Of a stretch of DNA of 64,000 nucleotides, positions 1 to 8,590 are shown in pieces; positions within the stretch are counted from its first letter, which is position 1, and each line of letters opens with the position of its first letter. Below the pieces are notes generated by a model that worked only from the letters and a program-made list of their open reading frames with translations, was not told where the DNA came from and searched no databases. The translations under genes and the position numbers were made by a program. The stretch is taken from positions 1 to 64,000 of IMG/VR virus record IMGVR_UViG_3300027816_000051; one strand, written 5' to 3'.

Positions 1-57
1 TCGAACTGGCATCTTCAGATTGGAAGTCTGAAGTAATGACCGTTATACGATATTCGC
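1..57 (-). tRNA. tRNA-Gly(TCC), 3' end cut by window edge
   Basis: Minus strand GCGAATA...TCAGA CTTCCAA TCTGA...GTTCGA; acceptor 3' strand lies outside the window. Confidence 0.9.
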
Positions 58-64
58 TTAAAAG

Positions 65-125
65 GTAGACCCGGGCCCAACAAGCCGTTTTCGTACGCAA
101 CGGAAGGGCCCTTTTTAAGGTCTAC
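65..125 (-). ncRNA. Candidate structured spacer RNA (nested rod hairpin)
   Basis: GTAGACC/GGTCTAC, GGGCCC/GGGCCC and CCGTT/AACGG nested stems. Confidence 0.4.
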
Positions 126-526
126 TTACTTTGATATCTCCATTTCCTACCCTTACCTCTTCGACCAAAAAATTCTGTTAAAGAATGACAGTTAGGACAG
201 AGTAACTCAACATTTGATAAATCATGATTATGTGGGTTACCATCTATATGATTAATTTGGATTGGGACTATCCCTGTATGTTCATTCACTTTATCCCATT
301 CACAAACCATACATTTTTCACCAAATTTTTCTATCAAATATTTTTTTGTTATCTCGTGGATTGTGTCACATCTTGTATATCTTTCAAAATTATTTTCCTC
401 TAAAGATTTGAAAATATTTTTTCTTTGATATTCGAATTGACACTTATTATTACAGTAAAGATTCCTATTAGGAATTTCACAACCACAATTCAAACATTGT
501 TTTTCTTTTTTTTCTCTATTTCTCAT
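122..526 (-). CDS. HNH endonuclease (free-standing, inside tRNA array)
   Basis: CxxC pairs plus C-terminal QINHIDGNPHNHDLSNVELLCPNCHS HNH motif. Confidence 0.9.
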   Translation of the reverse strand: MRNREKKEKQCLNCGCEIPNRNLYCNNKCQFEYQRKNIFKSLEENNFERYTRCDTIHEITKKYLIEKFGEKCMVCEWDKVNEHTGIVPIQINHIDGNPHNHDLSNVELLCPNCHSLTEFFGRRGKGRKWRYQSK

Positions 527-573
527 TGGACAACCATTATGTAATAATAAATATTGGTTGTCCGATAAAAGTG

Positions 574-645
574 AGCGACAGAATGGAATTGAACCATCGT
601 CCCCACCTTGGCAAGGTGGTATAATAACCGTTATACGACTATCGC
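574..645 (-). tRNA. tRNA-Gly(GCC)
   Basis: GCGATAG/CTGTCGC acceptor; CCACC TTGCCAA GGTGG anticodon arm; GTTCAATT T-loop. Confidence 0.93.
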
Positions 646-646
646 G

Positions 647-705
647 TGGAGTGGTCTTCCCATAACGATTTCCTTAACAGGTTTTGGAGTTAAGGGTGCG
701 ACCAC
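647..705 (-). ncRNA. Candidate tRNA-like minihelix / structured spacer ending in T-CCA
   Basis: GTGGTC/GACCAC closing stem followed by TCCA; internal CCTTAAC/GTTAAGG hairpin; too short for a cloverleaf. Confidence 0.35.
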
Positions 706-714
706 ATGATGATA

Positions 715-1167
715 TTATTTTTGATTTTTTTGTTGCCACTCATATGACACCGTATTTTCGGTAATCGGACCACCTTTTGCCCATGTTTTACATGTTCTTG
801 CGGAGTGACATTTAAAGTGATGCATCCAACAGTATCCTAATCTACCACTATCATCAGAAACCGAACCTGGCATACATTCATCCATTCTTGGTGATATATC
901 AAATGCAACACAATTACCACATAGTGATTTTTTAGCGGCTTCAACAGTCGTATTCCAATCGGATGCAACCATTTCCCAATAATCACCGGGTTCATCAATA
1001 TTAAGTGGACCATATTTTATATAATCCGCTTTTATTGATTTGTCTCTATTATTAGTGTTCAACTCTAAATCTTGAGTTGCTTTAGGACACTCCATTTCGG
1101 CTTCAGATAATAATCTTTTGTTTAATCTTTCGATAAGTTGTTTTTTCTTTTTTAATTCAATTCCCAT
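715..1167 (-). CDS. Cys/His-rich hypothetical phage protein
   Basis: Start moved to MGIELKK (1167) because the ORF-track N-terminus abuts tRNA-Ile2 and a TATTTATA motif sits at 1180-1187; CGNC, CWMHHFKC and C motifs suggest metal binding. Confidence 0.8.
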   Translation of the reverse strand: MGIELKKKKQLIERLNKRLLSEAEMECPKATQDLELNTNNRDKSIKADYIKYGPLNIDEPGDYWEMVASDWNTTVEAAKKSLCGNCVAFDISPRMDECMPGSVSDDSGRLGYCWMHHFKCHSARTCKTWAKGGPITENTVSYEWQQKNQK

Positions 1168-1192
1168 GATTTTTTTATATATAAATATCTCG

Positions 1193-1266
1193 TGGTCCCT
1201 CACGGGCTTGAACCGTGGACCTACCGATTATGAGTCGGGTGCTCTAACCAACTGAGCTAAGGGACC
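1193..1266 (-). tRNA. tRNA-Ile2(CAT), lysidine type
   Basis: GGTCCCTTAGCTCAGTTGGTTAGAGCA..GACTCATAATC..GGTC closely follows the bacterial ileX-type pattern; G1-C72. Confidence 0.8.
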
Positions 1267-1268
1267 AA

Positions 1269-1345
1269 TGGTAGTGGTGACGGGATTTGAACCCATAACC
1301 TTGACGGTATAAGCGTCCTGCTCTCACCAATTGAGCTACACCACC
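1269..1345 (-). tRNA. tRNA-Ile(TAT)
   Basis: Cloverleaf with anticodon loop CTTATAC; CCA encoded. Confidence 0.88.
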
Positions 1346-1887
1346 AAATCCAACGAAAACTCTATAATCGTACTCATTAAATGTTCTTCGTCATAGATTT
1401 TTATGTTCTCAAGTTCGATGTTATAAGAACACATATCACAATCCCATAATGCAAATCTTAAACCTTTTTTGAAATCATCCATATCTCGAATGTTCAAAAC
1501 ACCCATGTGACAATAAAGAGGATTGGGTAGGTATTTCCTTTCCAACATTTTATTGTGTTGGTGGTATAAGTCCCATTTTTCTTTATTGCCACTTTCATCC
1601 TTACCATTCCATTCCCCACCATGTTGTGTTGTTACATACCATTCGGTGTCCAATCTTTCATTCTCTAATGAATCTTCTTCAGATACCTCAATGACATTAC
1701 GAGTTTGTAACATATCAGTTGATAGGGTTGGGAGATAATTGTGAACGATTTCCAAACCAACATAATGACCAAGTTGATATTCTGCGGTTAAACTATTTTT
1801 CCACTCGATTCTTTCTTGTTTGAACCTTTCCTCCATTTCAGGAGTGATTGAATCCATCATACTTTTAATAATGTTATTTCTTTCCAT
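1336..1887 (-). CDS. Hypothetical protein (last codons overlap tRNA-Ile(TAT))
   Basis: Start moved to MERNNII (1887); the upstream part of the track ORF is tRNA-Tyr sequence. Confidence 0.75.
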   Translation of the reverse strand: MERNNIIKSMMDSITPEMEERFKQERIEWKNSLTAEYQLGHYVGLEIVHNYLPTLSTDMLQTRNVIEVSEEDSLENERLDTEWYVTTQHGGEWNGKDESGNKEKWDLYHQHNKMLERKYLPNPLYCHMGVLNIRDMDDFKKGLRFALWDCDMCSYNIELENIKIYDEEHLMSTIIEFSLDLVV

Positions 1888-1901
1888 ACTATTACTTTTT
1901 G

Positions 1902-1984
1902 TTGAAAGGGAGGGATTCGAACCCCCGTACCCCGAAGAGAGCAAATTTACAGTCTGCCGGTTTTAACCACTCACCCACCTTTCA
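1902..1984 (-). tRNA. tRNA-Tyr(GTA)
   Basis: GCAGA CTGTAAA TTTGC anticodon arm; long variable arm; GTTCGAAT. Confidence 0.93.
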
Positions 1985-1990
1985 TTGTTG

Positions 1991-2071
1991 TACCGAAGAA
2001 GGGACTCGAACCCCCACGCAATTACGCGCGACATCCTAAGTGTCGTGTGTCTACCATTCCACCACTTCGGC
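1991..2071 (-). tRNA. tRNA-Leu(TAG)
   Basis: GCCGAAG acceptor; CGACA CTTAGGA TGTCG; long variable arm. Confidence 0.93.
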
Positions 2072-2076
2072 AAAGT

Positions 2077-2140
2077 GTAGGACATCGCTTAACCTACGGT
2101 GTTGCTAGCATTACACACCTTCGATGTTTCCATCAGCGAT
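2077..2140 (-). ncRNA. Candidate compact structured RNA with GAAA tetraloop and crossing pairing
   Basis: ATCGCT/AGCGAT, GATG-GAAA-CATC, GGTGT/ACACC, GTAGG/CCTAC. Confidence 0.5.
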
Positions 2141-2147
2141 TTTTTTG

Positions 2148-2219
2148 CTCCCCGACCAAGATTCGAACTTGGGACCCAACGGTTAACAGCCGTTTGCTCT
2201 ACCACTGAGCTATCAAGGA
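2148..2219 (-). tRNA. tRNA-Asn(GTT)
   Basis: AACGG CTGTTAA CCGTT anticodon arm; canonical cloverleaf. Confidence 0.95.
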
Positions 2220-2224
2220 ATTTG

Positions 2225-2298
2225 TAGGGAAAACAGGACTCGAACCTGCGACCCCCTGGTCCCAAACCAGGTGCGCTAACCAACTGCGCTACTTCCCT
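2225..2298 (-). tRNA. tRNA-Pro(TGG)
   Basis: CCTGG TTTGGGA CCAGG anticodon arm. Confidence 0.95.
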
Positions 2299-2305
2299 AT
2301 TAAAA

Positions 2306-2445
2306 AAGATAGTGATGGAGTACCCGTCTCGCTCCAATCTTAACGGCTTCTTCTGAGTTTTATCAGTGCACCGGCCGAGGGTGATGAACACTATGAACCT
2401 TACAACTACTTTGTCGACTTTCATTGTAAGAGTGACCACTATCTT
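2306..2445 (-). ncRNA. Candidate multibranch ncRNA (~140 nt)
   Basis: Perfect 9-bp closing stem AAGATAGTG/CACTATCTT enclosing CTTACAA/TTGTAAG, CGGC/GCCG, CTGA/TCAG and TGGAG/CTCCA stems. Confidence 0.55.
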
Positions 2446-2447
2446 AG

Positions 2448-2519
2448 TAGGCCCACCAAGACTCGAACTTGGAACATCTCATTAGAAGTGAGAAGTTATA
2501 TCCCTTTAACTATGGGCCC
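2448..2519 (-). tRNA. tRNA-Arg(TCT)
   Basis: TCTCA CTTCTAA TGAGA anticodon arm. Confidence 0.95.
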
Positions 2520-2522
2520 ATT

Positions 2523-2724
2523 AAAATGAAAACCTCCTTCTACGCTCACCGTAGTTGTAGATTTGATTGGACATAGTTTACTGTCCACCTGTTGACGTGC
2601 ACATCAGAGCAGGGTCCATCACAGTTCACTTTGGGTCATGTAACTCATTTGGGTAGCTAATCCCAAGAGCCAAAGTTTCTTTCAACGGTGCTAATCCGTC
2701 CTCTGTAAGGAGTTTTTCATTTTT
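2523..2724 (-). ncRNA. Candidate multibranch ncRNA (~200 nt)
   Basis: 16/17-bp terminal stem; several internal hairpins, two with ATTAGC loops. Confidence 0.6.
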
Positions 2725-2725
2725 G

Positions 2726-2810
2726 TACCGAGGATGGGAGTCGAACCCACACGAACATTACTGTCCAAGGGATTTTAAGTCCCTCATGTCTACCATTCCA
2801 TCACCTCGGC
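2726..2810 (-). tRNA. tRNA-Leu(TAA)
   Basis: AGGGA CTTAAAA TCCCT; long variable arm. Confidence 0.95.
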
Positions 2811-2821
2811 ATTTACCAATT

Positions 2822-2840
2822 CCAATATGTCAAAGAACAA
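2822..2840 (-). promoter_or_regulatory. boxA-like antitermination element
   Basis: TTGTTCTTTGACATATTGG, identical to 5482-5500; resembles rrn boxA. Confidence 0.6.
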
Positions 2841-2871
2841 ATCTAATCAAAATATAAACAACAAAATCTTA

Positions 2872-2906
2872 AAAACAAAAAACCCGAACTTTTTTTGAGT
2901 TCGGGT
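2872..2906 (-). terminator. Intrinsic terminator of tRNA leader 1 (attenuator-like)
   Basis: ACCCGAACT-loop-AGTTCGGGT followed by T-rich tract. Confidence 0.8.
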
Positions 2907-2930
2907 CTTCTTATTAGTAGGTTAAGTTCC

Positions 2931-3035
2931 TTACACTTTTAAAAACTCCGAACATGGGTCACATAAATATATACCTCTCCCATTACCACTTAGTGGGTTG
3001 TTCAAGGGTTGTTGTATGTAAACCATTTTCATCAT
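2931..3035 (-). CDS. Putative leader peptide (34 aa, MMKMVYIQQPLNNPLSGNGRGIYLCDPCSEFLKV)
   Basis: Read by hand; lies between a consensus promoter and a terminator; its 3' end contains a strand complementary to the terminator 5' arm. Confidence 0.55.
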   Translation of the reverse strand: MMKMVYIQQPLNNPLSGNGRGIYLCDPCSEFLKV

Positions 3036-3052
3036 TTTGTTTATAACTATCA

Positions 3053-3083
3053 CAAAGATACAAAAAGTTTTTTAATTTCCAAG
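3053..3083 (-). promoter_or_regulatory. Bacteroidota sigma70-type promoter
   Basis: CTTG-N19-TATCTTTG. Confidence 0.8.
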
Positions 3084-3099
3084 TTTTTTTAAAAAAAAA

Positions 3100-3342
3100 T
3101 TAAAATAAATCTTCACACCATATTGGAGTCTTTTCACCAACGTAAGAACCGGAAACATTAAATTCAAAATATTCTACCGCTTCTGTCATATCCATTCCTT
3201 GATTCATAAGTATAGTGATACACTTCTCAACAGAATAGATTAATCTCATTGAAGATGTTTCAATTCCTATTACCGCATCATCAAATCCATCAGCAATTAA
3301 GATTTGTTCATCTTCGTATTGTTCTAAAATTTTTTCTAACAT
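3100..3342 (-). CDS. Hypothetical phage protein
   Basis: Start moved to MLEKIL (3342); ADGFDDAVIG...EYFEFNV..SYVGE.TPI is a protein-like pattern; upstream part of the track ORF is tRNA-Glu. Confidence 0.8.
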   Translation of the reverse strand: MLEKILEQYEDEQILIADGFDDAVIGIETSSMRLIYSVEKCITILMNQGMDMTEAVEYFEFNVSGSYVGEKTPIWCEDLF

Positions 3343-3370
3343 ATTGGTTTTTTTTAATTTAATTTCAGTG

Positions 3371-3442
3371 TAGCCCGACGGGGAATCGAACCCCGCTTTC
3401 ATCCGTGAAAGGGACGTGTCCTAACCGATAGACGACCGGGCC
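3371..3442 (-). tRNA. tRNA-Glu(TTC)
   Basis: CGTCC CTTTCAC GGATG anticodon arm. Confidence 0.93.
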
Positions 3443-3448
3443 AATTTG

Positions 3449-3536
3449 AGGAGAGTGAGGGATTCGAACCCCCGGAACCCTCACGAGTTCTCCTGATTTC
3501 AAGTCAGGTGCAATAAACCAACTCTACCAACTCTCC
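3449..3536 (-). tRNA. tRNA-Ser(TGA)
   Basis: CCTGA CTTGAAA TCAGG; long variable arm; discriminator U. Confidence 0.93.
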
Positions 3537-3540
3537 AATT

Positions 3541-3746
3541 ACCCCACCTGAGATTACGGTGAGTAGTCATTTCGGTTTATTTTCTTTCAAACAACCTGAA
3601 GGGCGTCCCCGTTAAAAAAAGTCAACACTACTGGGAGGAGGTGTGTCGCTCTCCTTTGTTCCCATGAAGTCCCACTCGCGCCGTAGACTTTCTGCGGAAT
3701 CATTCTTAAAGTCTTGATTCGAAGACTCTGAGTATCTCTTACTCAT
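3541..3746 (-). ncRNA. Candidate structured ncRNA (~205 nt)
   Basis: GC-richer non-coding spacer with hairpins TGAGTA/TACTCA, AGTCTT/AAGACT, GGAG/CTCC, AGTAGT/ACTACT, CTCACC/GGTGGG. Confidence 0.45.
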
Positions 3747-3748
3747 TG

Positions 3749-3820
3749 CGGTCCCACCGGGAATCGAACCCGGCACTTCGCCGTGACAGGGCGATATTAT
3801 AGCCGATTAACTATGAGACC
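3749..3820 (-). tRNA. tRNA-Asp(GTC)
   Basis: TCGCC CTGTCAC GGCGA; G73. Confidence 0.95.
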
Positions 3821-3826
3821 AATCGG

Positions 3827-3900
3827 AGCCTCCTGTCGGATTCGAACCAACGACCCGCTGATTACAAATCAGCTGCTCTGGCCAACTGAGCTAAGGAGGC
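3827..3900 (-). tRNA. tRNA-Thr(TGT)
   Basis: GCTGA TTTGTAA TCAGC. Confidence 0.95.
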
Positions 3901-3906
3901 AATAGT

Positions 3907-3990
3907 GGGTCAGAGTAGTCACGGCCACCTCTGTTCCTTCTGACCCTTGTCATAACCGTGGCAAGATGTGGCTCGACCCTAATTATGACC
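3907..3990 (-). ncRNA. Candidate two-hairpin RNA with loop-loop complementarity
   Basis: GTCATAA/TTATGAC and GGGTCAGA/TCTGACCC stems; loops carry GCCAC/GTGGC and CACGG/CCGTG complements. Confidence 0.5.
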
Positions 3991-3995
3991 ATTTG

Positions 3996-4067
3996 TTGCG
4001 GGGGTCGGATTCGAACCGACGACCTTTAGGTTATGAGCCTAACGAGCTACCACTGCTCTACCCCACG
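3996..4067 (-). tRNA. Initiator tRNA-fMet(CAT)
   Basis: C1:A72 mismatch (CGTGGGG/CCCCGCA); TTAGG CTCATAA CCTAA. Confidence 0.88.
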
Positions 4068-4068
4068 A

Positions 4069-4085
4069 TATATTTCAAAGAACAA
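4069..4085 (-). promoter_or_regulatory. boxA-like element (variant)
   Basis: TTGTTCTTTGAAATATA immediately 5' of tRNA-fMet. Confidence 0.5.
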
Positions 4086-4123
4086 ATAAAATATAAGAAG
4101 TAAATTCCATATTTCAAAATGTT

Positions 4124-4201
4124 TGGTTGCGGGACCCGGACTCGAACCGGGAACTTCAGCTTATGAGACTGACGAGATGACCACTTTCTACGCATCCCGC
4201 A
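4124..4201 (-). tRNA. Atypical tRNA(CAT), fMet-like with irregular D-arm
   Basis: TGCGGGA/TCCCGCA acceptor, TCAGT CTCATAA GCTGA, CCA encoded; about 3 extra nt before the D-stem. Confidence 0.7.
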
Positions 4202-4206
4202 ATGTT

Positions 4207-4283
4207 TGGTTGGAATAATAGGAATCGAACCTATAACCTTTCGCGTATCAGACGAATGCTCTAACCAATTGAGCTATATTCCA
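4207..4283 (-). tRNA. tRNA-Ile(GAT)
   Basis: TTCGT CTGATAC GCGAA; CCA encoded. Confidence 0.95.
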
Positions 4284-4286
4284 ATT

Positions 4287-4364
4287 TGGGGTAAATAATC
4301 GGATTCGAACCGACGACCTTCTGGACCACAATCAGACGTTCTAACCAACTGAACTATATCTACC
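4287..4364 (-). tRNA. tRNA-His(GTG)
   Basis: Loop TTGTGGT; encoded G-1 opposite C73; CCA encoded. Confidence 0.93.
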
Positions 4365-4372
4365 ATTTATAA

Positions 4373-4423
4373 ATTATAAGGTTCAAACCTTATAATGAAC
4401 CATTATAAGTCTCACACCTTATA
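4373..4423. repeat. Chain of overlapping short inverted repeats around TTATAA
   Basis: ATTATAAGGTTCAAACCTTATAATGAACCATTATAAGTCTCACACCTTATA. Confidence 0.6.
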
Positions 4424-4426
4424 TTG

Positions 4427-4500
4427 AGGTCCCGAGTGGATTCGAACCACCGAATAAGAGTTTTGCAGACTCCCCCCTTAAGCCACTTGGGTACAGGACC
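4427..4500 (-). tRNA. tRNA-Cys(GCA)
   Basis: GGAGT CTGCAAA ACTCT; U73. Confidence 0.93.
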
Positions 4501-4501
4501 G

Positions 4502-4576
4502 TGGTGATTCCTAAAGGACTCGAACCCTTACTTCAACGTCCGTAGCGTTGCGTGCTATCCATTACACCAAAGAACC
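4502..4576 (-). tRNA. tRNA-Arg(ACG)
   Basis: CAACG CTACGGA CGTTG; CCA encoded. Confidence 0.93.
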
Positions 4577-4577
4577 A

Positions 4578-5006
4578 TTACTTAATTCGTTCATCCCATT
4601 CTTCTTGGGTCCCCAATCTAATTGGAACGAACAATGCAAATCCATCATCATCTTCAAAATGGTTACAATCATCCTCTCTCCAACCAAACTTATATCTCAT
4701 GTGTATAAATTTGTTTGTCTCTTGATTCCATCTTGCGATTGTGGTATTTCTATGTTCACCAATATAAATTTGACCATTTACTAAATCTTTTTTAGGAATC
4801 GCACCTGCGTCAATTAGTTTCGGAACATAGAACTCTCTCCATTCTTTTTCATCCACTCTTGGAAGAGTTGGGACATCTTCGGGATTATTAATCTTTGGTA
4901 AATTCTCCCAATGATTCCTAATCATTCTTTCCCTCTCTTCTTTTAGTTTCATTTTCTCCGCTTCAAATTTCATTTTGACGGCGTTGATGTTATCATTTCT
5001 TTCCAT
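4578..5006 (-). CDS. Hypothetical protein
   Basis: Start moved to MERNDNI (5006); upstream part of the track ORF is tRNA-Trp/Val sequence. Confidence 0.8.
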   Translation of the reverse strand: MERNDNINAVKMKFEAEKMKLKEERERMIRNHWENLPKINNPEDVPTLPRVDEKEWREFYVPKLIDAGAIPKKDLVNGQIYIGEHRNTTIARWNQETNKFIHMRYKFGWREDDCNHFEDDDGFALFVPIRLGTQEEWDERIK

Positions 5007-5028
5007 GTCGTTTATTTTTAAAAGTTTG

Positions 5029-5099
5029 CACAGGTGGAGAGATTCGAACTCCCAACAACGGTTTTGGAGACCGGTATGATACCCTTTCACTACACCTGT
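5029..5099 (-). tRNA. tRNA-Trp(CCA)
   Basis: CGGT CTCCAAA ACCG anticodon arm. Confidence 0.93.
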
Positions 5100-5107
5100 G
5101 TATTGTG

Positions 5108-5180
5108 TAGTCCCTGTCGGATTCGAACCGACGACCCTCTGCATGTAAGGCAGACGCTCTCCCAACTGAGCTAAGGAACT
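5108..5180 (-). tRNA. tRNA-Val(TAC)
   Basis: TCTGC CTTACAT GCAGA. Confidence 0.95.
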
Positions 5181-5190
5181 ATGAAAGGAA

Positions 5191-5313
5191 AGAGGAAGAT
5201 GGTTCAGTGGACATCCTCTTTTACGATTGGCGTTACTTCAGGTGAATATCTGCAAACTCCGAATACATCATCCAATATTCACTCTCGAGATATTGATGTA
5301 TCATTCCCCAATC
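5191..5313 (-). ncRNA. Candidate pseudoknot/switch RNA
   Basis: GATTGG/CCAATC closing stem; crossing TACATCA/TGATGTA and GTGAATAT/ATATTCAC stems; trailing GAGGA/TCCTC hairpin. Confidence 0.5.
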
Positions 5314-5321
5314 AACCTTTG

Positions 5322-5395
5322 TGTCCCCGATGCGACTCGAACGCATAACCCCCACATTAAAAGTGTGGTGCTCTAACCAATTGAGCTACGAAGAC
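5322..5395 (-). tRNA. tRNA-Lys(TTT)
   Basis: CCACA CTTTTAA TGTGG. Confidence 0.95.
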
Positions 5396-5400
5396 AAATG

Positions 5401-5473
5401 TGGTACCGACAGGAATTGAACCTGTGACACCCAGATTTTCAGTCTGGTGCTCTACCAACTGAGCTACGGTACC
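5401..5473 (-). tRNA. tRNA-Phe(GAA)
   Basis: CCAGA CTGAAAA TCTGG. Confidence 0.95.
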
Positions 5474-5481
5474 ATTTTAAA

Positions 5482-5500
5482 CCAATATGTCAAAGAACAA
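5482..5500 (-). promoter_or_regulatory. boxA-like antitermination element
   Basis: TTGTTCTTTGACATATTGG, identical to 2822-2840. Confidence 0.6.
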
Positions 5501-5505
5501 CTTTG

Positions 5506-5575
5506 TGGACACTGTGGGAATCGAACCCAATCGTTCTGATTGCAAATCAGACGGTCTGCCGTTGACATCAGGCCC
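5506..5575 (-). tRNA. Atypical tRNA-Ala(TGC)
   Basis: TCTGA TTTGCAA TCAGA; G3:U70 present; bulged or mismatched acceptor stem; A at position 8. Confidence 0.75.
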
Positions 5576-5582
5576 ATAAAAC

Positions 5583-5610
5583 AAAAAAACCTCGAGATTT
5601 CTCCCGAGGT
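5583..5610 (-). terminator. Intrinsic terminator of tRNA leader 2 (attenuator-like)
   Basis: ACCTCGGGA-GAAA-TCTCGAGGT followed by a T run. Confidence 0.85.
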
Positions 5611-5638
5611 TCCTTTATATCGTTTTAAACTAAACAAC

Positions 5639-5728
5639 TTACAAGACACCTCGGGACATGCAAATATCAGCCACCTCCGCCCATTTTGAACAGATTGTAA
5701 ATGACATTGTATGTGTAAAGCGTCTCAT
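5639..5728 (-). CDS. Putative leader peptide (29 aa, MRRFTHTMSFTICSKWAEVADICMSRGVL)
   Basis: Read by hand; between promoter and terminator; contains TCCCGAGGT, a perfect 9-nt complement of the terminator 5' arm. Confidence 0.6.
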   Translation of the reverse strand: MRRFTHTMSFTICSKWAEVADICMSRGVL

Positions 5729-5758: not shown

Positions 5759-5790
5759 CAAAGATAATAATAAGTATGCTGAAAAACAAG
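5759..5790 (-). promoter_or_regulatory. Bacteroidota sigma70-type promoter heading the tRNA array
   Basis: CTTG-N20-TATCTTTG. Confidence 0.8.
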
Positions 5791-6179: not shown

Positions 6180-6677
6180 GTGATGAAGAGACTGCCCATC
6201 ATATTATTATTATTTCTAATATCATTTGGATTTTCGAATCTGAATGCCCAAACTATTGTTGTTGATACGGTAATCAATAACATTAAAATTGGTCCGTTCA
6301 CCGAAAATAAGAATTTGGCTTTCGGTGTTAAAAATATAATTGAAGAAATCATCAATGAACAGGATAGTTTAATTCTGATTACAGATAAAAATAAAGCAGA
6401 CTACAAAATTAAAGTTGAACTCATATTTTTTGACATTGTAACGACTAACTCGGGGGTTAGTATTTTTCACGAAGACAAAACAACCACCGTCATAAGAATG
6501 AAAGGTGTATTGTACAAAGGTGATAAAAAAATTAAACAGGAATTTTCGGAAGGTAAATCAACCGAAATTTCAACCTCAACCATAATGATTGATGAGGGTG
6601 GTAAATTCAATCAACAATCTGCTAGTTCGGCATTAAAGAAAACAACTCAAAACCTAATAAACAAACTAATACTATGA
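6180..6677 (+). CDS. Exported protein, probable CsgG/TolB-N-like fold
   Basis: Sec signal peptide; C-terminal G.S.....KFNQQSASSALKK parallels the CsgG-like protein at 9477. Confidence 0.6.
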   Translation: MMKRLPIILLLFLISFGFSNLNAQTIVVDTVINNIKIGPFTENKNLAFGVKNIIEEIINEQDSLILITDKNKADYKIKVELIFFDIVTTNSGVSIFHEDKTTTVIRMKGVLYKGDKKIKQEFSEGKSTEISTSTIMIDEGGKFNQQSASSALKKTTQNLINKLIL

Positions 6678-8590
6678 AAAAATTATTATTTATCCTAACC
6701 GCGTTAATTTTTACGACGACCGCGTTTTCTCAAACTACGCCACAGATTGGTAATCCTGTTGCGTATAAAACAATCAAAAGGGGTGACACCCTTGATGTTG
6801 TGTTTAAATACACACCAGCATCTTCTGTTGATGTTAGAACTTTCCAAGTTGATTTTCAATATAGAAAACAACTTTTCACTCACGTATCAACAACTGTCGA
6901 CCCAACTGTGAGTACTATGACACCAGCACTTTCGATTAAGTTCTTTAACAACTACAAATACTCAAGCTACAGTTCGGGAACTGGTTTGTACTCATATTCA
7001 ACGGATACAAATTACACTGTGGCAAGAAACTTTTTGGTTTTGTCAAGTGGTTCTCAAATCACCCAAGACACCTTTTTGATTCACAACAAATTTATCATCA
7101 ACGATGTTGAATCGAACTTCGACGCGGACAGTGTTGAAATAAACTGGGCTCGAATGTTCAAATATGACGGTACTACAATAGGTGATAACATTGCAATCTT
7201 AGATGTTCAAGACATGCATCTTGAACTTTTGGGTAACTTGGTTATCAGTGGTGTTGTTGAATTACCGCCAACAATGAAACTAAATGGTAGAAGACCAACA
7301 GTTATATGTACAAAATACAACACAGGTACATTTGTATCATCAGCACTTTGTGACACTGCGGGTTTCTACTCACTTAACAACGTAGATAAAAATACTAAGT
7401 ATAAATTACTTGTAAGATTCCCCGCGGATAGTATGGAAGTTTTCAGAGATTACGCAGTGACAATATCAGACGCGGTAAAAACATATGATGAATATACAGT
7501 AACTGATGTAAACCAAGGATTTGGTCAACAATATTTGAAAAATGGCTTGGCTTATCTAATAGGTGATATGAACCAAAACGGAAAGTTAGATGGTGGTGAC
7601 CCATACTTGATTTATGCAAACGTTAGTGGTATGAAAAAAATTGACACCACAACCATGATTAGAACATTCCACGCTGATGTTTATGATTCATTAGTGTTAG
7701 GTTCAACACAATGGAATGATTGGCCAAATCATTTAACCGCCACCAATTTTATTACTGATAGTGTTGGATTAACTAATAAGACAGTAAACATTAAGTACTT
7801 TATTCAAGGTGATGTTGACAGAACTTACTCATCGAGAGTATGGAACTCATCAGGTGTATTAGTAGCTAAGGCGGTGTTTAAAGGTAAATTAGATGTTGAG
7901 ATACCTAATACCGCATCATCAGGTAATCAACCAATATACGTACCATTTAATGTAAACACTAATGGTGATAATAATTATGGTCTACAGTTTGAAATGAAAT
8001 ATGATAAAAACAAGGTTAAATTTGAAGAAATCATATCTAATTTTAACGGAGGTCCATGGTTACAGTACGTTACACATGACGCAACTGCTGGTACAATTAG
8101 ATTTGGTGGTATGAATAACCAATTTAAAGATGGTTTAATTGGTCAAGCAACACCATTTAAATTAAAATTTTCACCTATTGGAAATAATGATATTGTGAGT
8201 AATATTTACGTTAGACAATTAATGGACGCATCCGATGAAAGAGGTGACCACTTGAATATTGACTTAGTTAGTAGTGTTGCTGTTATTATGTACAAAATGG
8301 CACCACCTATGAATCAAGACATTGATGAAATTACAGCATCAATTCGTCCAAACCCAACTGGTGGTTGGTTTGAATTAGAAGTAAAATTTCCCAACCCAAA
8401 CATGTCAATGAATGTTTCCATCTATGATAATAGAGGTCAACTAATTAAACAAGTTGGTTCTGTTACCACTAACTATATGGAAACAACTGCCTACAAACAA
8501 ATTGATATGAGTTCTGCATCATCAGGTAATTATTATCTGATTTTGAATAATTATAATAAACAATTAACAAGACAATTTATAAAAGTTTAA
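6674..8590 (+). CDS. T9SS type-A-sorted protein with cohesin-like and dockerin-like modules
   Basis: Signal peptide; GDMNQNGKLDGGDPYLI Ca-loop and later QGDVD; GLQFEMKYDKNKVKFEEI...IRFGG cohesin-like; C-terminal IRPNPT...IYDNRGQLI...GNYYLIL...QFIKV sorting domain. Confidence 0.8.
   Translation: MKKLLFILTALIFTTTAFSQTTPQIGNPVAYKTIKRGDTLDVVFKYTPASSVDVRTFQVDFQYRKQLFTHVSTTVDPTVSTMTPALSIKFFNNYKYSSYSSGTGLYSYSTDTNYTVARNFLVLSSGSQITQDTFLIHNKFIINDVESNFDADSVEINWARMFKYDGTTIGDNIAILDVQDMHLELLGNLVISGVVELPPTMKLNGRRPTVICTKYNTGTFVSSALCDTAGFYSLNNVDKNTKYKLLVRFPADSMEVFRDYAVTISDAVKTYDEYTVTDVNQGFGQQYLKNGLAYLIGDMNQNGKLDGGDPYLIYANVSGMKKIDTTTMIRTFHADVYDSLVLGSTQWNDWPNHLTATNFITDSVGLTNKTVNIKYFIQGDVDRTYSSRVWNSSGVLVAKAVFKGKLDVEIPNTASSGNQPIYVPFNVNTNGDNNYGLQFEMKYDKNKVKFEEIISNFNGGPWLQYVTHDATAGTIRFGGMNNQFKDGLIGQATPFKLKFSPIGNNDIVSNIYVRQLMDASDERGDHLNIDLVSSVAVIMYKMAPPMNQDIDEITASIRPNPTGGWFELEVKFPNPNMSMNVSIYDNRGQLIKQVGSVTTNYMETTAYKQIDMSSASSGNYYLILNNYNKQLTRQFIKV

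What the first reader, a model, noticed from the sequence alone, without database searches (positions are those of the whole stretch)
2822..5500. Three rrn boxA-like elements inside the phage tRNA array
Seen: identical 19-mer TTGTTCTTTGACATATTGG at 2822-2840 and 5482-5500, and a variant TTGTTCTTTGAAATATA at 4069-4085, each just 5' of a run of tRNAs. Known: boxA (about GYTCTTT(A/G)A) recruits NusB/NusE and partners for rRNA-operon antitermination. Inference: the phage recruits the host rrn antitermination complex to transcribe long untranslated tRNA runs past Rho and hairpins.
Basis: partly seen in the sequence, partly recalled or inferred. Interest (0 to 1): 0.65.

Follow-up and report, generated by a model that had tools for sequence, protein, structure and literature searches.

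The report
Host-type boxA elements in phage tRNA array
A 288-kb freshwater phage of Bacteroidota carries, in front of three runs of its own tRNA genes, exact copies of the short RNA signal (boxA) that its host phylum uses in ribosomal-RNA and tRNA operons to make RNA polymerase termination-resistant, and dozens of other uncultured phages do the same.

Summary
TTGTTCTTTGACATATTGG occurs at 2840-2822 and 5500-5482, and a variant at 4085-4068. Each sits 1-11 nt before a tRNA.

Bacteroidota 16S-23S spacers carry GTTCTTTGACAT(A/G)(T/G)TG(G/A) before 23S, and three sampled genomes have the phage 17-mer exactly. Host rrn leaders and non-rrn tRNA operons also carry GTTCTTTGA a few nt before the first tRNA.

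In IMG/VR, 30 of 121 exact 16-mer hits lie beside same-strand tRNAs, against 0 of 120 for a reversed control. Phage arrays also exist with other host-lineage boxA variants.

Identity as a host-type boxA is therefore well supported. Recruitment of NusB/S10 and antitermination remain inferred.

Three complications:
- The array is not one untranslated run; it contains ORFs, promoters and two strong terminator hairpins.
- Many phage copies directly abut a terminator-like hairpin.
- In some phages the motif fills the spacer of a canonical Bacteroidota promoter.

Verdict: a new variant of a known kind (boxA/Nus antitermination), not found in the literature searched. Interest is moderate to high.

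The parts
5482..5500 (-). boxA copy a (TTGTTCTTTGACATATTGG); 5 nt after tRNA-like 5575-5506, 8 nt before tRNA-Phe
   Evidence: The 17-nt core is identical to host spacer boxA. It is 100% conserved in the orthologous phage locus L010 while the flanks diverge. Predicted unpaired.
4068..4085 (-). boxA copy b (TTGTTCTTTGAAATATAT); between two tRNA-Met genes, abutting the second
   Evidence: The GAAAT variant resembles the host leader form GTTCTTTGAAAGT and phage variants.
2822..2840 (-). boxA copy c (TTGTTCTTTGACATATTGG); 36 nt after hairpin, 11 nt before tRNA-Leu(taa)
   Evidence: Conserved in ortholog L120. Contained in the RNA-library contig X15 record 1, which spans 2795-3042.
2877..2911 (-). 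intrinsic-terminator-like hairpin plus U-run upstream of copy c
   Evidence: Folds at -18.3 kcal/mol, z -4.9. Identical in L120. RNA contig X17 record 17 ends at 2878, whereas X15 record 1 runs through it.
5585..5615 (-). intrinsic-terminator-like hairpin plus U-run upstream of tRNA-like element and copy a
   Evidence: Folds at -21.5 kcal/mol, z -6.7. L010 has a hairpin of different sequence at the same place.
5506..5575 (-). weak tRNA-like element; reading the sequence by eye gives an anticodon loop TTTGCAA (UGC, Ala)
   Evidence: Rfam tRNA 31.8 bits. Not called by ARAGORN. 68/70 nt conserved in L010.
3053..3060 (-). TATCTTTG, Bacteroidota-type -7 promoter box with TTG in the -33 window; drives sORF 3035-2931 and, by read-through, copy c
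   Evidence: RNA contig X15 record 1 ends at 3042. Conserved in L120.
5759..5766 (-). TATCTTTG, Bacteroidota-type -7 promoter box at the head of the array
   Evidence: No RNA-library coverage above 5775 in the four runs laid.
2838..2845 (-). TAGATTTG promoter-like box overlapping the first three bases of copy c
   Evidence: Also present in L120. It would place a transcription start inside boxA, so it bears on the promoter rival.
1..5575 (-). tRNA array (24-25 tRNA genes, all minus strand) interspersed with ORFs and untranslated gaps; cut by the contig end

Best explanation
The three elements are phage copies of the host phylum's rrn/tRNA-operon boxA. Proposed mechanism: once transcribed as single-stranded RNA at the head of a tRNA sub-run, each copy is bound by the host NusB-S10 (NusE) heterodimer. 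With NusG, NusA and accessory factors this converts host RNA polymerase into an rrn-type, termination-resistant and fast elongation complex. That complex carries transcription through the untranslated, highly structured tRNA and ncRNA stretches.

Copies recur every 1.2-1.4 kb (5500, 4085, 2840), as boxA recurs in rrn leader and spacer. This would reload polymerases that enter from upstream units, reading through the hairpins at 5615-5585 and 2911-2877, or from internal promoters.

What is shown:
- Sequence identity with host boxA.
- Sense orientation and a constrained distance to the tRNA.
- The same layout in host tRNA operons.
- Wide recurrence in phage tRNA arrays.
- Presence of the element in RNA-library contigs.

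What is inferred: Nus-factor binding, and any effect on termination, elongation speed or tRNA yield.
For: 1. Match to host spacers. Bacteroidota 16S-23S spacers have GTTCTTTGACAT(A/G)(T/G)TG(G/A) about 100-250 nt before 23S. The phage 17-mer is exact in L290 (G012), L297 (G088) and L252 (G164), and there is one change in L299. Rhodothermaceae and Ignavibacteriales spacers carry the full 18-mer after tRNA-Ile/Ala.

2. Host use. In complete host genomes the 12-mer occurs about once per rrn operon. rrn leaders have a TAnnTTTG promoter, then 20-25 nt, then GCTCTTTAAAA or GTTCTTTACA, plus GTTCTTTGAAAGT about 150 nt before 16S.

3. Host tRNA operons outside rrn show promoter, small hairpin, GTTCTTTGA, then 6-20 nt, then tRNA (L328, L329, L331, L332, L267). 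The gapped pattern hit 10 of 151 genomes against 0 for the control. This matches the phage spacing of 9-16 nt.

4. Recurrence in phages. In IMG/VR, 30 of 121 exact hits lie within 200 nt of a same-strand tRNA, against 0 of 120 for the reversed control. Further, unascertained copies occur in the same arrays.

5. Host tracking. Phage arrays with other host-lineage variants (GACATGATGA, GACATGGTGA) have them 11 nt before tRNA-Leu(taa).

6. Selection. Orthologous loci keep the motif unchanged while the flanks diverge.

7. Factors and RNA. The core is 9/12 identical to E. coli UGCUCUUUAACA and shares UCUUUGA with the B. subtilis boxA shown to bind NusB (PMC13753749). It is predicted unpaired. NusB is present in the host genomes and absent from the phage. 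RNA-library contig X15 record 1 runs from about 11 nt below the 3053 promoter box through the hairpin and boxA c into tRNA-Leu.
Against: - No binding or functional data exist.
- Two window copies and 14 of 30 phage copies lie just downstream of a canonical terminator-shaped hairpin. That is an odd place for an antitermination loading site unless the hairpin is leaky or plays a boxB-like role.
- In 6 of 28 phage instances a canonical TAnnTTTG box follows the motif, so the motif is the -33 to -7 spacer and would not be in that transcript. In copy c and L120 a TAGATTTG box overlaps the motif.
- Few intrinsic terminators lie downstream of the copies, so the need for antitermination rests on assumed Rho action.
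- The RNA evidence is from assembled contigs. These cannot show 5' ends, and DNA carry-over is not formally excluded.
- The true host species is unknown. The comparison is at phylum level.
Confidence: 0.6

Rival explanations
1. DNA-level promoter element. The motif, often together with the preceding T-run plus G, is part of a promoter that restarts transcription right after the upstream terminator. The -33/spacer region, or a degenerate -7 TTTG box, would give each tRNA run a short leader.
For: - The motif commonly follows a terminator hairpin directly, with only 9-16 nt to the tRNA, so a promoter seems needed there.
- L111/L053 have TTG-N19-TATCTTTG and L061/L079/L093 have TTG-N18-TATCTTTG, with the motif filling the spacer.
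- Copy c and L120 have TAGATTTG overlapping the motif.
- In the bacterial loci L200 and L239 the motif's TTTG lies 18 nt before a TAnnTTTG box.
Against: - 20 of 28 instances have no TAnnTTTG at a usable distance, including copies a and b.
- Copy a has a tRNA-like gene where the -33 element would be.
- In host tRNA operons and rrn leaders the same sequence lies clearly downstream of a separate canonical promoter, and in spacers it lies far from any promoter.
- The match to host boxA extends 8 nt beyond TTTG, and its variants track host spacer variants. A promoter model does not predict this.
- An RNA-library contig runs through the hairpin and the motif.
Confidence: 0.15
2. RNA processing or folding signal without antitermination. 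The conserved single-stranded stretch would be a recognition or cleavage site for a host maturation nuclease, or one strand of a processing helix as in pre-rRNA. It would separate the upstream mRNA, stabilised by its 3' hairpin, from the tRNA precursor.
For: - In host G033 the reverse complement of the 12-mer lies just 3' of 23S, so the spacer boxA region is one strand of the 23S processing stem.
- Conservation in hosts and phages extends beyond the 12-nt boxA core, to ATATTGG.
- The motif keeps a fixed short distance to the tRNA 5' end.
- It sits directly after 3' hairpins.
Against: - No complementary partner exists in the phage: there is no plus-strand copy in the array, and folding leaves the motif unpaired.
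- tRNA 5' ends are made by RNase P without leader sequence requirements (established knowledge).
- The core that is invariant is the boxA core itself.
Confidence: 0.12
3. Passive hitch-hiker. The motif was captured together with tRNA genes from host rrn spacers or tRNA operons and persists without function in the phage.
For: - Copy a follows a tRNA-like element whose anticodon loop reads UGC (Ala) by eye, which is the host spacer order tRNA-Ala then boxA. L064 has tRNA-Ala(tgc), then the motif, then tRNA-Ile.
- Host tRNA operons carry the motif at the same distance.
Against: - The motif precedes many different tRNAs: Leu, Phe, Met, Ser, Thr, Glu, Ile, Asn.
- It stays invariant while flanks and the neighbouring leader diverge.
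- It occurs in several copies per array and in many unrelated contigs.
- The alignment of the tRNA-like element with host spacer tRNA-Ala shows only generic tRNA similarity.
Confidence: 0.08

Closest known systems
rrn antitermination signal (boxB-boxA-boxC in leader and 16S-23S spacer; NusB-S10, NusG, NusA, SuhB, S4 complex)
   Same: - The core sequence is the same and matches the host-phylum spacer version up to 17/17 nt.
- It is in sense and untranslated.
- It is repeated along the transcription unit.
- It is often preceded by a hairpin, as in E. coli boxB-boxA and B. subtilis rrn leaders (PMC13753749).
- tRNAs lie downstream.
   Different: - It is encoded by a phage and sits ahead of tRNA runs, not rRNA.
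- The preceding hairpin is GC-rich with a U-run, which is terminator-shaped.
- The distance to the mature RNA is 1-16 nt, against 100-250 nt in rrn.
- No processing-stem partner is present.
Host (Bacteroidota) tRNA-operon leaders with GTTCTTTGA (found here: L328, L329, L331, L332, L267)
   Same: The layout is the same: promoter, short hairpin or leader, boxA-like core, 6-20 nt, first tRNA.
   Different: The host operons have an obvious TAnnTTTG promoter 15-40 nt upstream and no terminator. I found no published description of these leaders, so their function is also inferred.
Lambdoid phage nut sites (boxA + boxB with N protein)
   Same: A phage uses a host-type boxA RNA to engage Nus factors for processive antitermination.
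   Different: - In nut, boxA is followed by a boxB hairpin that binds the phage N protein. Here the hairpin lies upstream and looks like a terminator.
- No N-like factor was sought.
- The targets are tRNA genes rather than delayed-early genes.
boxA upstream of non-rRNA targets: suhB 5'UTR and CRISPR arrays (PMC5725501; cited in PMC13753749)
   Same: boxA is used outside rRNA. For CRISPR arrays it protects a long untranslated, repetitive RNA from Rho-dependent termination, which is the same rationale as for a tRNA array.
   Different: Those cases are chromosomal and gammaproteobacterial, with a single copy at the 5' end. This case is phage-borne, has several copies, and is in Bacteroidota.

Membership tests
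rrn-type boxA (Nus-factor loading RNA) | Core sequence matching the boxA consensus (E. coli UGCUCUUUAACA / GYTCTTTAANA; Gram-positive UCUUUGAAA) | tested here: met
   GUUCUUUGACAU is 9/12 identical to the E. coli core, has Y at position 2, and has G at position 8 as in B. subtilis.
rrn-type boxA (Nus-factor loading RNA) | The same sequence is present in the host's rrn leader and 16S-23S spacer | tested here: met
   Exact 17-mer in the spacers of G012, G088 and G164, with close variants in at least 10 other Bacteroidota spacers. Related cores occur in leaders. The test is at phylum level only, because the actual host species is unknown.
rrn-type boxA (Nus-factor loading RNA) | Lies on the transcribed strand, downstream of a promoter, in untranslated RNA | tested here: inconclusive
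   All three copies are in sense and intergenic. TATCTTTG boxes lie 212 and 258 nt upstream. An RNA-library contig spans promoter-proximal leader, hairpin, boxA c and tRNA-Leu. However, contigs cannot show 5' ends, and strong hairpins intervene.
rrn-type boxA (Nus-factor loading RNA) | Single-stranded in the nascent RNA | tested here: met
   Minimum-free-energy and centroid folds leave the motif unpaired or in weak, non-significant pairs. This is prediction only.
rrn-type boxA (Nus-factor loading RNA) | Host encodes NusB (and S10) | tested here: met
   The Pfam NusB family scores over its cut-off in G088, G012, G001, G033 and the B. thetaiotaomicron control. There is no match in the phage record.
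rrn-type boxA (Nus-factor loading RNA) | Binds NusB-S10 and renders RNA polymerase resistant to Rho or intrinsic termination | not testable with these tools
   Needs binding assays and read-through reporters.
Lambdoid nut site | boxA followed by a boxB hairpin bound by a phage N-type protein | tested here: not met
   No hairpin lies between the motif and the tRNA (1-16 nt). The hairpins lie upstream and carry U-runs. An N homologue was not searched for.
Bacteroidota sigma-A promoter (-33 TTG / -7 TAnnTTTG, 18-20 nt spacer) | TAnnTTTG at the proper distance from a TTG, placed to start transcription upstream of the tRNA | tested here: not met
   Copies a and b have no TAnnTTTG. Copy c has an overlapping TAGATTTG with a 16-nt spacer to TTG, which would start transcription inside the motif. 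The feature is met in 6 of 28 other phage instances.
Intrinsic terminator (the upstream hairpins) | GC-rich stem-loop followed by a U-run | tested here: met
   Hairpin 2911-2877 folds at -18.3 kcal/mol and 5615-5585 at -21.5 kcal/mol; both are followed by 6-7 U. Termination efficiency is unknown: one RNA contig ends at the hairpin foot and another reads through.

The most novel reading that the evidence does not exclude
Host-type boxA placed at the head of tRNA sub-operons, frequently fused to the U-run of a terminator hairpin, may be a widespread and so far undescribed cis-regulatory module of Bacteroidota phages. Through it the phages would put their tRNA arrays under the host's rRNA-type elongation/antitermination machinery, without any N-like protein. 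Because the phage copy follows the host lineage's own spacer boxA variant, the element could also serve as a host-prediction marker. A more speculative extension is that abundant boxA-bearing phage RNA also titrates NusB-S10 away from host rrn operons.
Probability: 0.45. Interest if true: 0.72.

Novelty: new variant of a known kind. Interest (0 to 1): 0.6.

Why it matters
Phage tRNA arrays are common in large phages, but how such long, untranslated, highly structured regions are transcribed efficiently is rarely addressed.

If these elements load Nus factors, the phage gains rRNA-like transcription of its tRNAs (fast, and resistant to Rho and to hairpins) simply by copying a 12-19 nt host signal. 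That would be a second, N-independent way for phages to exploit the Nus system.

It would also extend boxA-dependent control to tRNA operons in Bacteroidota, a phylum whose transcription elongation control is little studied.

Finally, it gives a short sequence marker that links uncultured phages to host lineages.

Tried and rejected
- **Exact 18-mer scan of genome contigs.** Most hits were a multi-copy DDE transposase ORF on the opposite strand in Chitinophagales MAGs (contig ends; Pfam). These were set aside as irrelevant.
- **Exact TGTTCTTTGAMATAT in 401 Bacteroidota genomes.** Only 22 genomes matched, against about 14 control hits. This first looked like a refutation. It is explained by hosts having A or G, not T, before GTTC.
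- **Rfam search for 23S across genomes.** It failed on the server and was replaced by BLAST with a 23S 5' fragment.
- **Rfam on phage loci that looked rrn-like.** Only tRNAs were found, no rRNA.
- **GenBank phages.** No close relative of the array was found, and no cultured phage has the motif in a tRNA array at this sensitivity.
- **Capture from a host spacer.** Alignment of the tRNA-like element plus boxA with a host spacer showed only generic tRNA similarity.
- **Leader-peptide attenuator idea (weak His_leader hit).** Rejected. The sORF before copy c is a conserved small protein gene with synonymous changes, and the leader before copy a is not conserved.
- **The 36346 match.** Rejected as a fourth element.
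- **Literature searches.** No description of boxA in phage tRNA arrays or in Bacteroidota was found.
- **Not used:** Complex prediction, which does not take RNA.


Full report
**Observation**

The window is the first 64 kb of a 288,260-bp IMG/VR virus record (33% G+C, CheckV 92% complete).

ARAGORN finds 23 tRNA genes. Rfam adds a truncated one at 1-57 and a weak one at 5575-5506. All are on the minus strand within 1-5575.

So all three copies are in sense with the tRNAs and lie in intergenic DNA. They sit 11, 8 and 1 nt before tRNA-Leu(taa), tRNA-Phe and tRNA-Met respectively.

Chance does not explain this:
- No shuffle of 100 reached the observed count.
- The 10-mer TGTTCTTTGA occurs only six times in 288 kb, three of them here.
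- The window's fourth match (36346, + strand) is antisense inside an ORF and is a chance hit.

**Surroundings**

The array is not one untranslated run. On the minus strand it holds:
- ORFs at 4578-5012, 3100-3339, 1336-1890, 715-1203 and 122-526.
- Two Bacteroidota-type -7 boxes (TATCTTTG) at 5766-5759 and 3060-3053.
- Two strong terminator-shaped hairpins at 5615-5585 and 2911-2877, folding at -21.5 and -18.3 kcal/mol, each followed by a U-run.

The order of elements is as follows.
- Head of the array: promoter, roughly 150-nt leader, hairpin, tRNA-like element, boxA a, then tRNA-Phe and onward.
- Before copy c: promoter, a 34-codon ORF (3035-2931), hairpin, 36 nt, boxA c, then tRNA-Leu and onward.
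- Copy b lies between two tRNA-Met genes.

The copies are 1,415 and 1,245 nt apart.

A T9SS C-terminal sorting domain in the neighbouring 638-aa protein and the TAnnTTTG promoter boxes point to a Bacteroidota host. The phage sequence is held by freshwater and lake metagenomes from at least 16 studies.

**Is it the host's boxA?**

Using the 5' end of 23S as a probe, I collected spacers from a sample of 91 Bacteroidota genomes. Every spacer I could anchor except one (L296) has GYTCTTTGACA before 23S, and most read GTTCTTTGACAT(A/G)(T/G)TG(G/A), about 100-250 nt before 23S.
- The phage 17-mer GTTCTTTGACATATTGG is exact in L290 (G012) and L297 (G088). It is also exact in L252 (G164) from another search.
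- L299 differs by one base.
- A Bacteroidales-like group has GACATGGTGAAAAAG, and another group has GACATGATGAAAGC.

In complete genomes the 12-mer occurs about once per rrn operon. In G033 its reverse complement lies just 3' of 23S, so the spacer boxA region is also one strand of the 23S processing stem.

rrn leaders show a TAnnTTTG promoter, then 20-25 nt, then GCTCTTTAAAA or GTTCTTTACA. A further GTTCTTTGAAAGT lies about 150 nt before 16S.

An earlier survey requiring a T before GTTC found the 15-mer in only 22 of 401 genomes. That is explained by hosts having A or G at that position.

**Host tRNA operons**

The same core heads non-rrn tRNA operons in Bacteroidota.
- L328 (G001): TACCTTTG, a 5-bp hairpin, the motif, 12 nt, then tRNA-Gly-Leu-Leu-Gly.
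- L329 (G092): upstream of tRNA-Thr-Tyr-Gly-Thr.
- L331 (G123): upstream of tRNA-Ala.
- L332 (G099): upstream of tRNA-Gly.
- L267 (G242): upstream of tRNA-Gly.

The gapped pattern coupling GTTCTTTGA to a tRNA D-loop hit 10 of 151 genomes and the reversed control hit none. Five of those ten hits were spacer tRNAs, four were non-rrn tRNA operons and one was a coding-region false positive.

The distance to the tRNA is 6-20 nt, which matches the phage.

**Other phages**

Of 121 exact 16-mer hits in the first 120 IMG/VR loci:
- 30 lie within 200 nt of a same-strand tRNA.
- 16 of those are 9-30 nt upstream of a tRNA.
- Only three loci have only antisense tRNAs.

The reversed pattern gave 120 hits, none near a tRNA.

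The same arrays hold further boxA-like copies that were not selected by the search, including forms preceded by A-runs as in hosts.

Orthologous loci keep the motif unchanged while the flanks diverge (L120 for copy c, L010 for copy a).

Phage arrays also exist with the other host variants. GACATGATGAAAAG (L352/L392) and GACATGGTGA (L364) each lie 11 nt before tRNA-Leu(taa). So the phage element follows host-lineage boxA variation beyond the core.

No cultured phage in GenBank showed the motif in a tRNA array.

**Mechanism**

The best reading is that these are functional boxA RNAs that load host NusB-S10.
- The core shares 9 of 12 positions with E. coli boxA.
- It shares UCUUUGA with the B. subtilis element shown by NMR to bind NusB.
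- In B. subtilis, a small hairpin also directly precedes boxA (PMC13753749).
- boxA is known to act outside rRNA, at suhB and CRISPR arrays (PMC5725501; PMC13753749).
- The motif is predicted single-stranded.
- NusB is present in the host genomes and absent from the phage.

RNA-library contigs from freshwater metatranscriptomes fit transcription through the element.
- X15 record 1 covers 2795-3042. That runs from about 11 nt below the 3053 box, through the small ORF and the hairpin, across boxA c and into tRNA-Leu.
- X17 record 17 ends at the hairpin foot (2878).
- X15 record 7, from a relative, covers hairpin, tRNA-like element, boxA a and tRNA-Phe.
- ORF bins at 3085-3318 and 4606-4956, and the region above 5775, are empty in most or all runs. 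This argues against uniform DNA carry-over.

These are contigs, not reads. They show presence in RNA libraries, not 5' ends.

**Difficulties and rivals**

Three facts complicate the boxA reading:
- Fourteen of 30 phage copies, and two of three here, lie just after a terminator-shaped hairpin.
- In six of 28 instances a canonical TAnnTTTG box follows, so the motif fills the promoter spacer (TTG-N18/19-TATCTTTG).
- In copy c and L120 a TAGATTTG box overlaps the motif.

A promoter role therefore cannot be dismissed. But most instances lack a usable -7 box. The host contexts place the same sequence downstream of separate promoters or deep in spacers. A promoter model also does not predict that the 3' flank co-varies with host spacers.

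A pure processing-signal role is possible, given the 23S stem in G033. However, the phage has no complementary partner.

A passive relic is unlikely given invariance amid diverging flanks, multiple copies per array and many different neighbouring tRNAs.

**Novelty**

Literature searches found no description of boxA in phage tRNA arrays or in Bacteroidota.

I file this as a new variant of a known kind: boxA/Nus-type processive antitermination, as in rrn, lambda nut, suhB and CRISPR arrays. Here it is phage-borne, N-independent, multi-copy and dedicated to tRNA runs.

- Confidence that the element is a host-type boxA copy: about 0.9.
- Confidence that it works by Nus-factor loading: about 0.6.

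Noticed in passing
window 2562-2623 (-): A full-length match to Rfam freshwater-1 RNA (RF02979; 84.7 bits against a gathering score of 72). It sits inside the tRNA array between tRNA-Leu(taa) and tRNA-Arg(tct). RNA-library contigs X16 record 8 and X17 record 16 cover it without differences.
   Followed up: partly
window 5506-5575 (-): A tRNA-like element (Rfam 31.8 bits, missed by ARAGORN). Reading the sequence by eye, its anticodon loop is TTTGCAA (UGC, Ala) and its acceptor stem pairs poorly. It is 68/70 nt conserved in L010 and lies directly between a terminator hairpin and boxA copy a. tRNA-Ala(UGC) followed by boxA is the host spacer order.
   Followed up: partly
window 3537-3747, 2299-2446, 5181-5320, 3901-3994, 2072-2146 (-): Untranslated gaps of 75-210 nt between tRNAs with no Rfam match at E<=1. 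Some are covered by RNA-library contigs (for example 3608-3664 and 3851-4002). They may be further phage ncRNAs.
   Followed up: no
window 2931-3035 (-): A 34-codon ORF with its own TATCTTTG promoter and terminator. It is conserved in L120 with several synonymous changes, so it is probably a real small protein. A 29-codon ORF at about 5639-5728 is not conserved in L010.
   Followed up: partly
window 6674-8590 (+): A 638-aa protein with a T9SS C-terminal sorting domain (Por_Secre_tail, E 3e-8). This indicates a Bacteroidota host and a phage protein that could be exported by the host's type IX secretion system.
   Followed up: partly
window 122-526 (-): An ORF inside the tRNA array with weak treble-clef and HNH endonuclease matches, below the Pfam cut-offs. 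It may be a homing endonuclease among the tRNA genes.
   Followed up: no
window 1-57 (-): The record begins inside a tRNA gene, so the array is cut by the contig end and may be longer.
   Followed up: no
L197:15-1187 (-) and many Chitinophagales contig ends (L126, L130, L153 and others): A multi-copy IS (DDE_Tnp_1 transposase) carries the reverse complement of the 18-mer inside its coding sequence. It dominates exact-pattern scans of genomes and is a trap for anyone counting this motif.
   Followed up: yes
G033:C1:199115-199126 (+) and 1402295-1402306 (-): The reverse complement of the spacer boxA 12-mer lies just 3' of 23S in both rrn operons. In this Bacteroidota genome the boxA region therefore doubles as one strand of the 23S processing stem.
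   Followed up: partly
L340, L344, L365, L379, L384, L397; L338/L341/L387; L345/L367/L395: Recurrent non-coding-looking contexts in other IMG/VR contigs carry GTTCTTTGACATGATGAAAA without an adjacent ARAGORN-called tRNA. They may be boxA-led ncRNAs in gut-type phages.
   Followed up: no
L031, L086, L107: In these phage contigs the motif follows a tRNA by 5-6 nt and is followed at once by AAGGAGA and an ATG. There, boxA appears to lead into a protein-coding gene.
   Followed up: no
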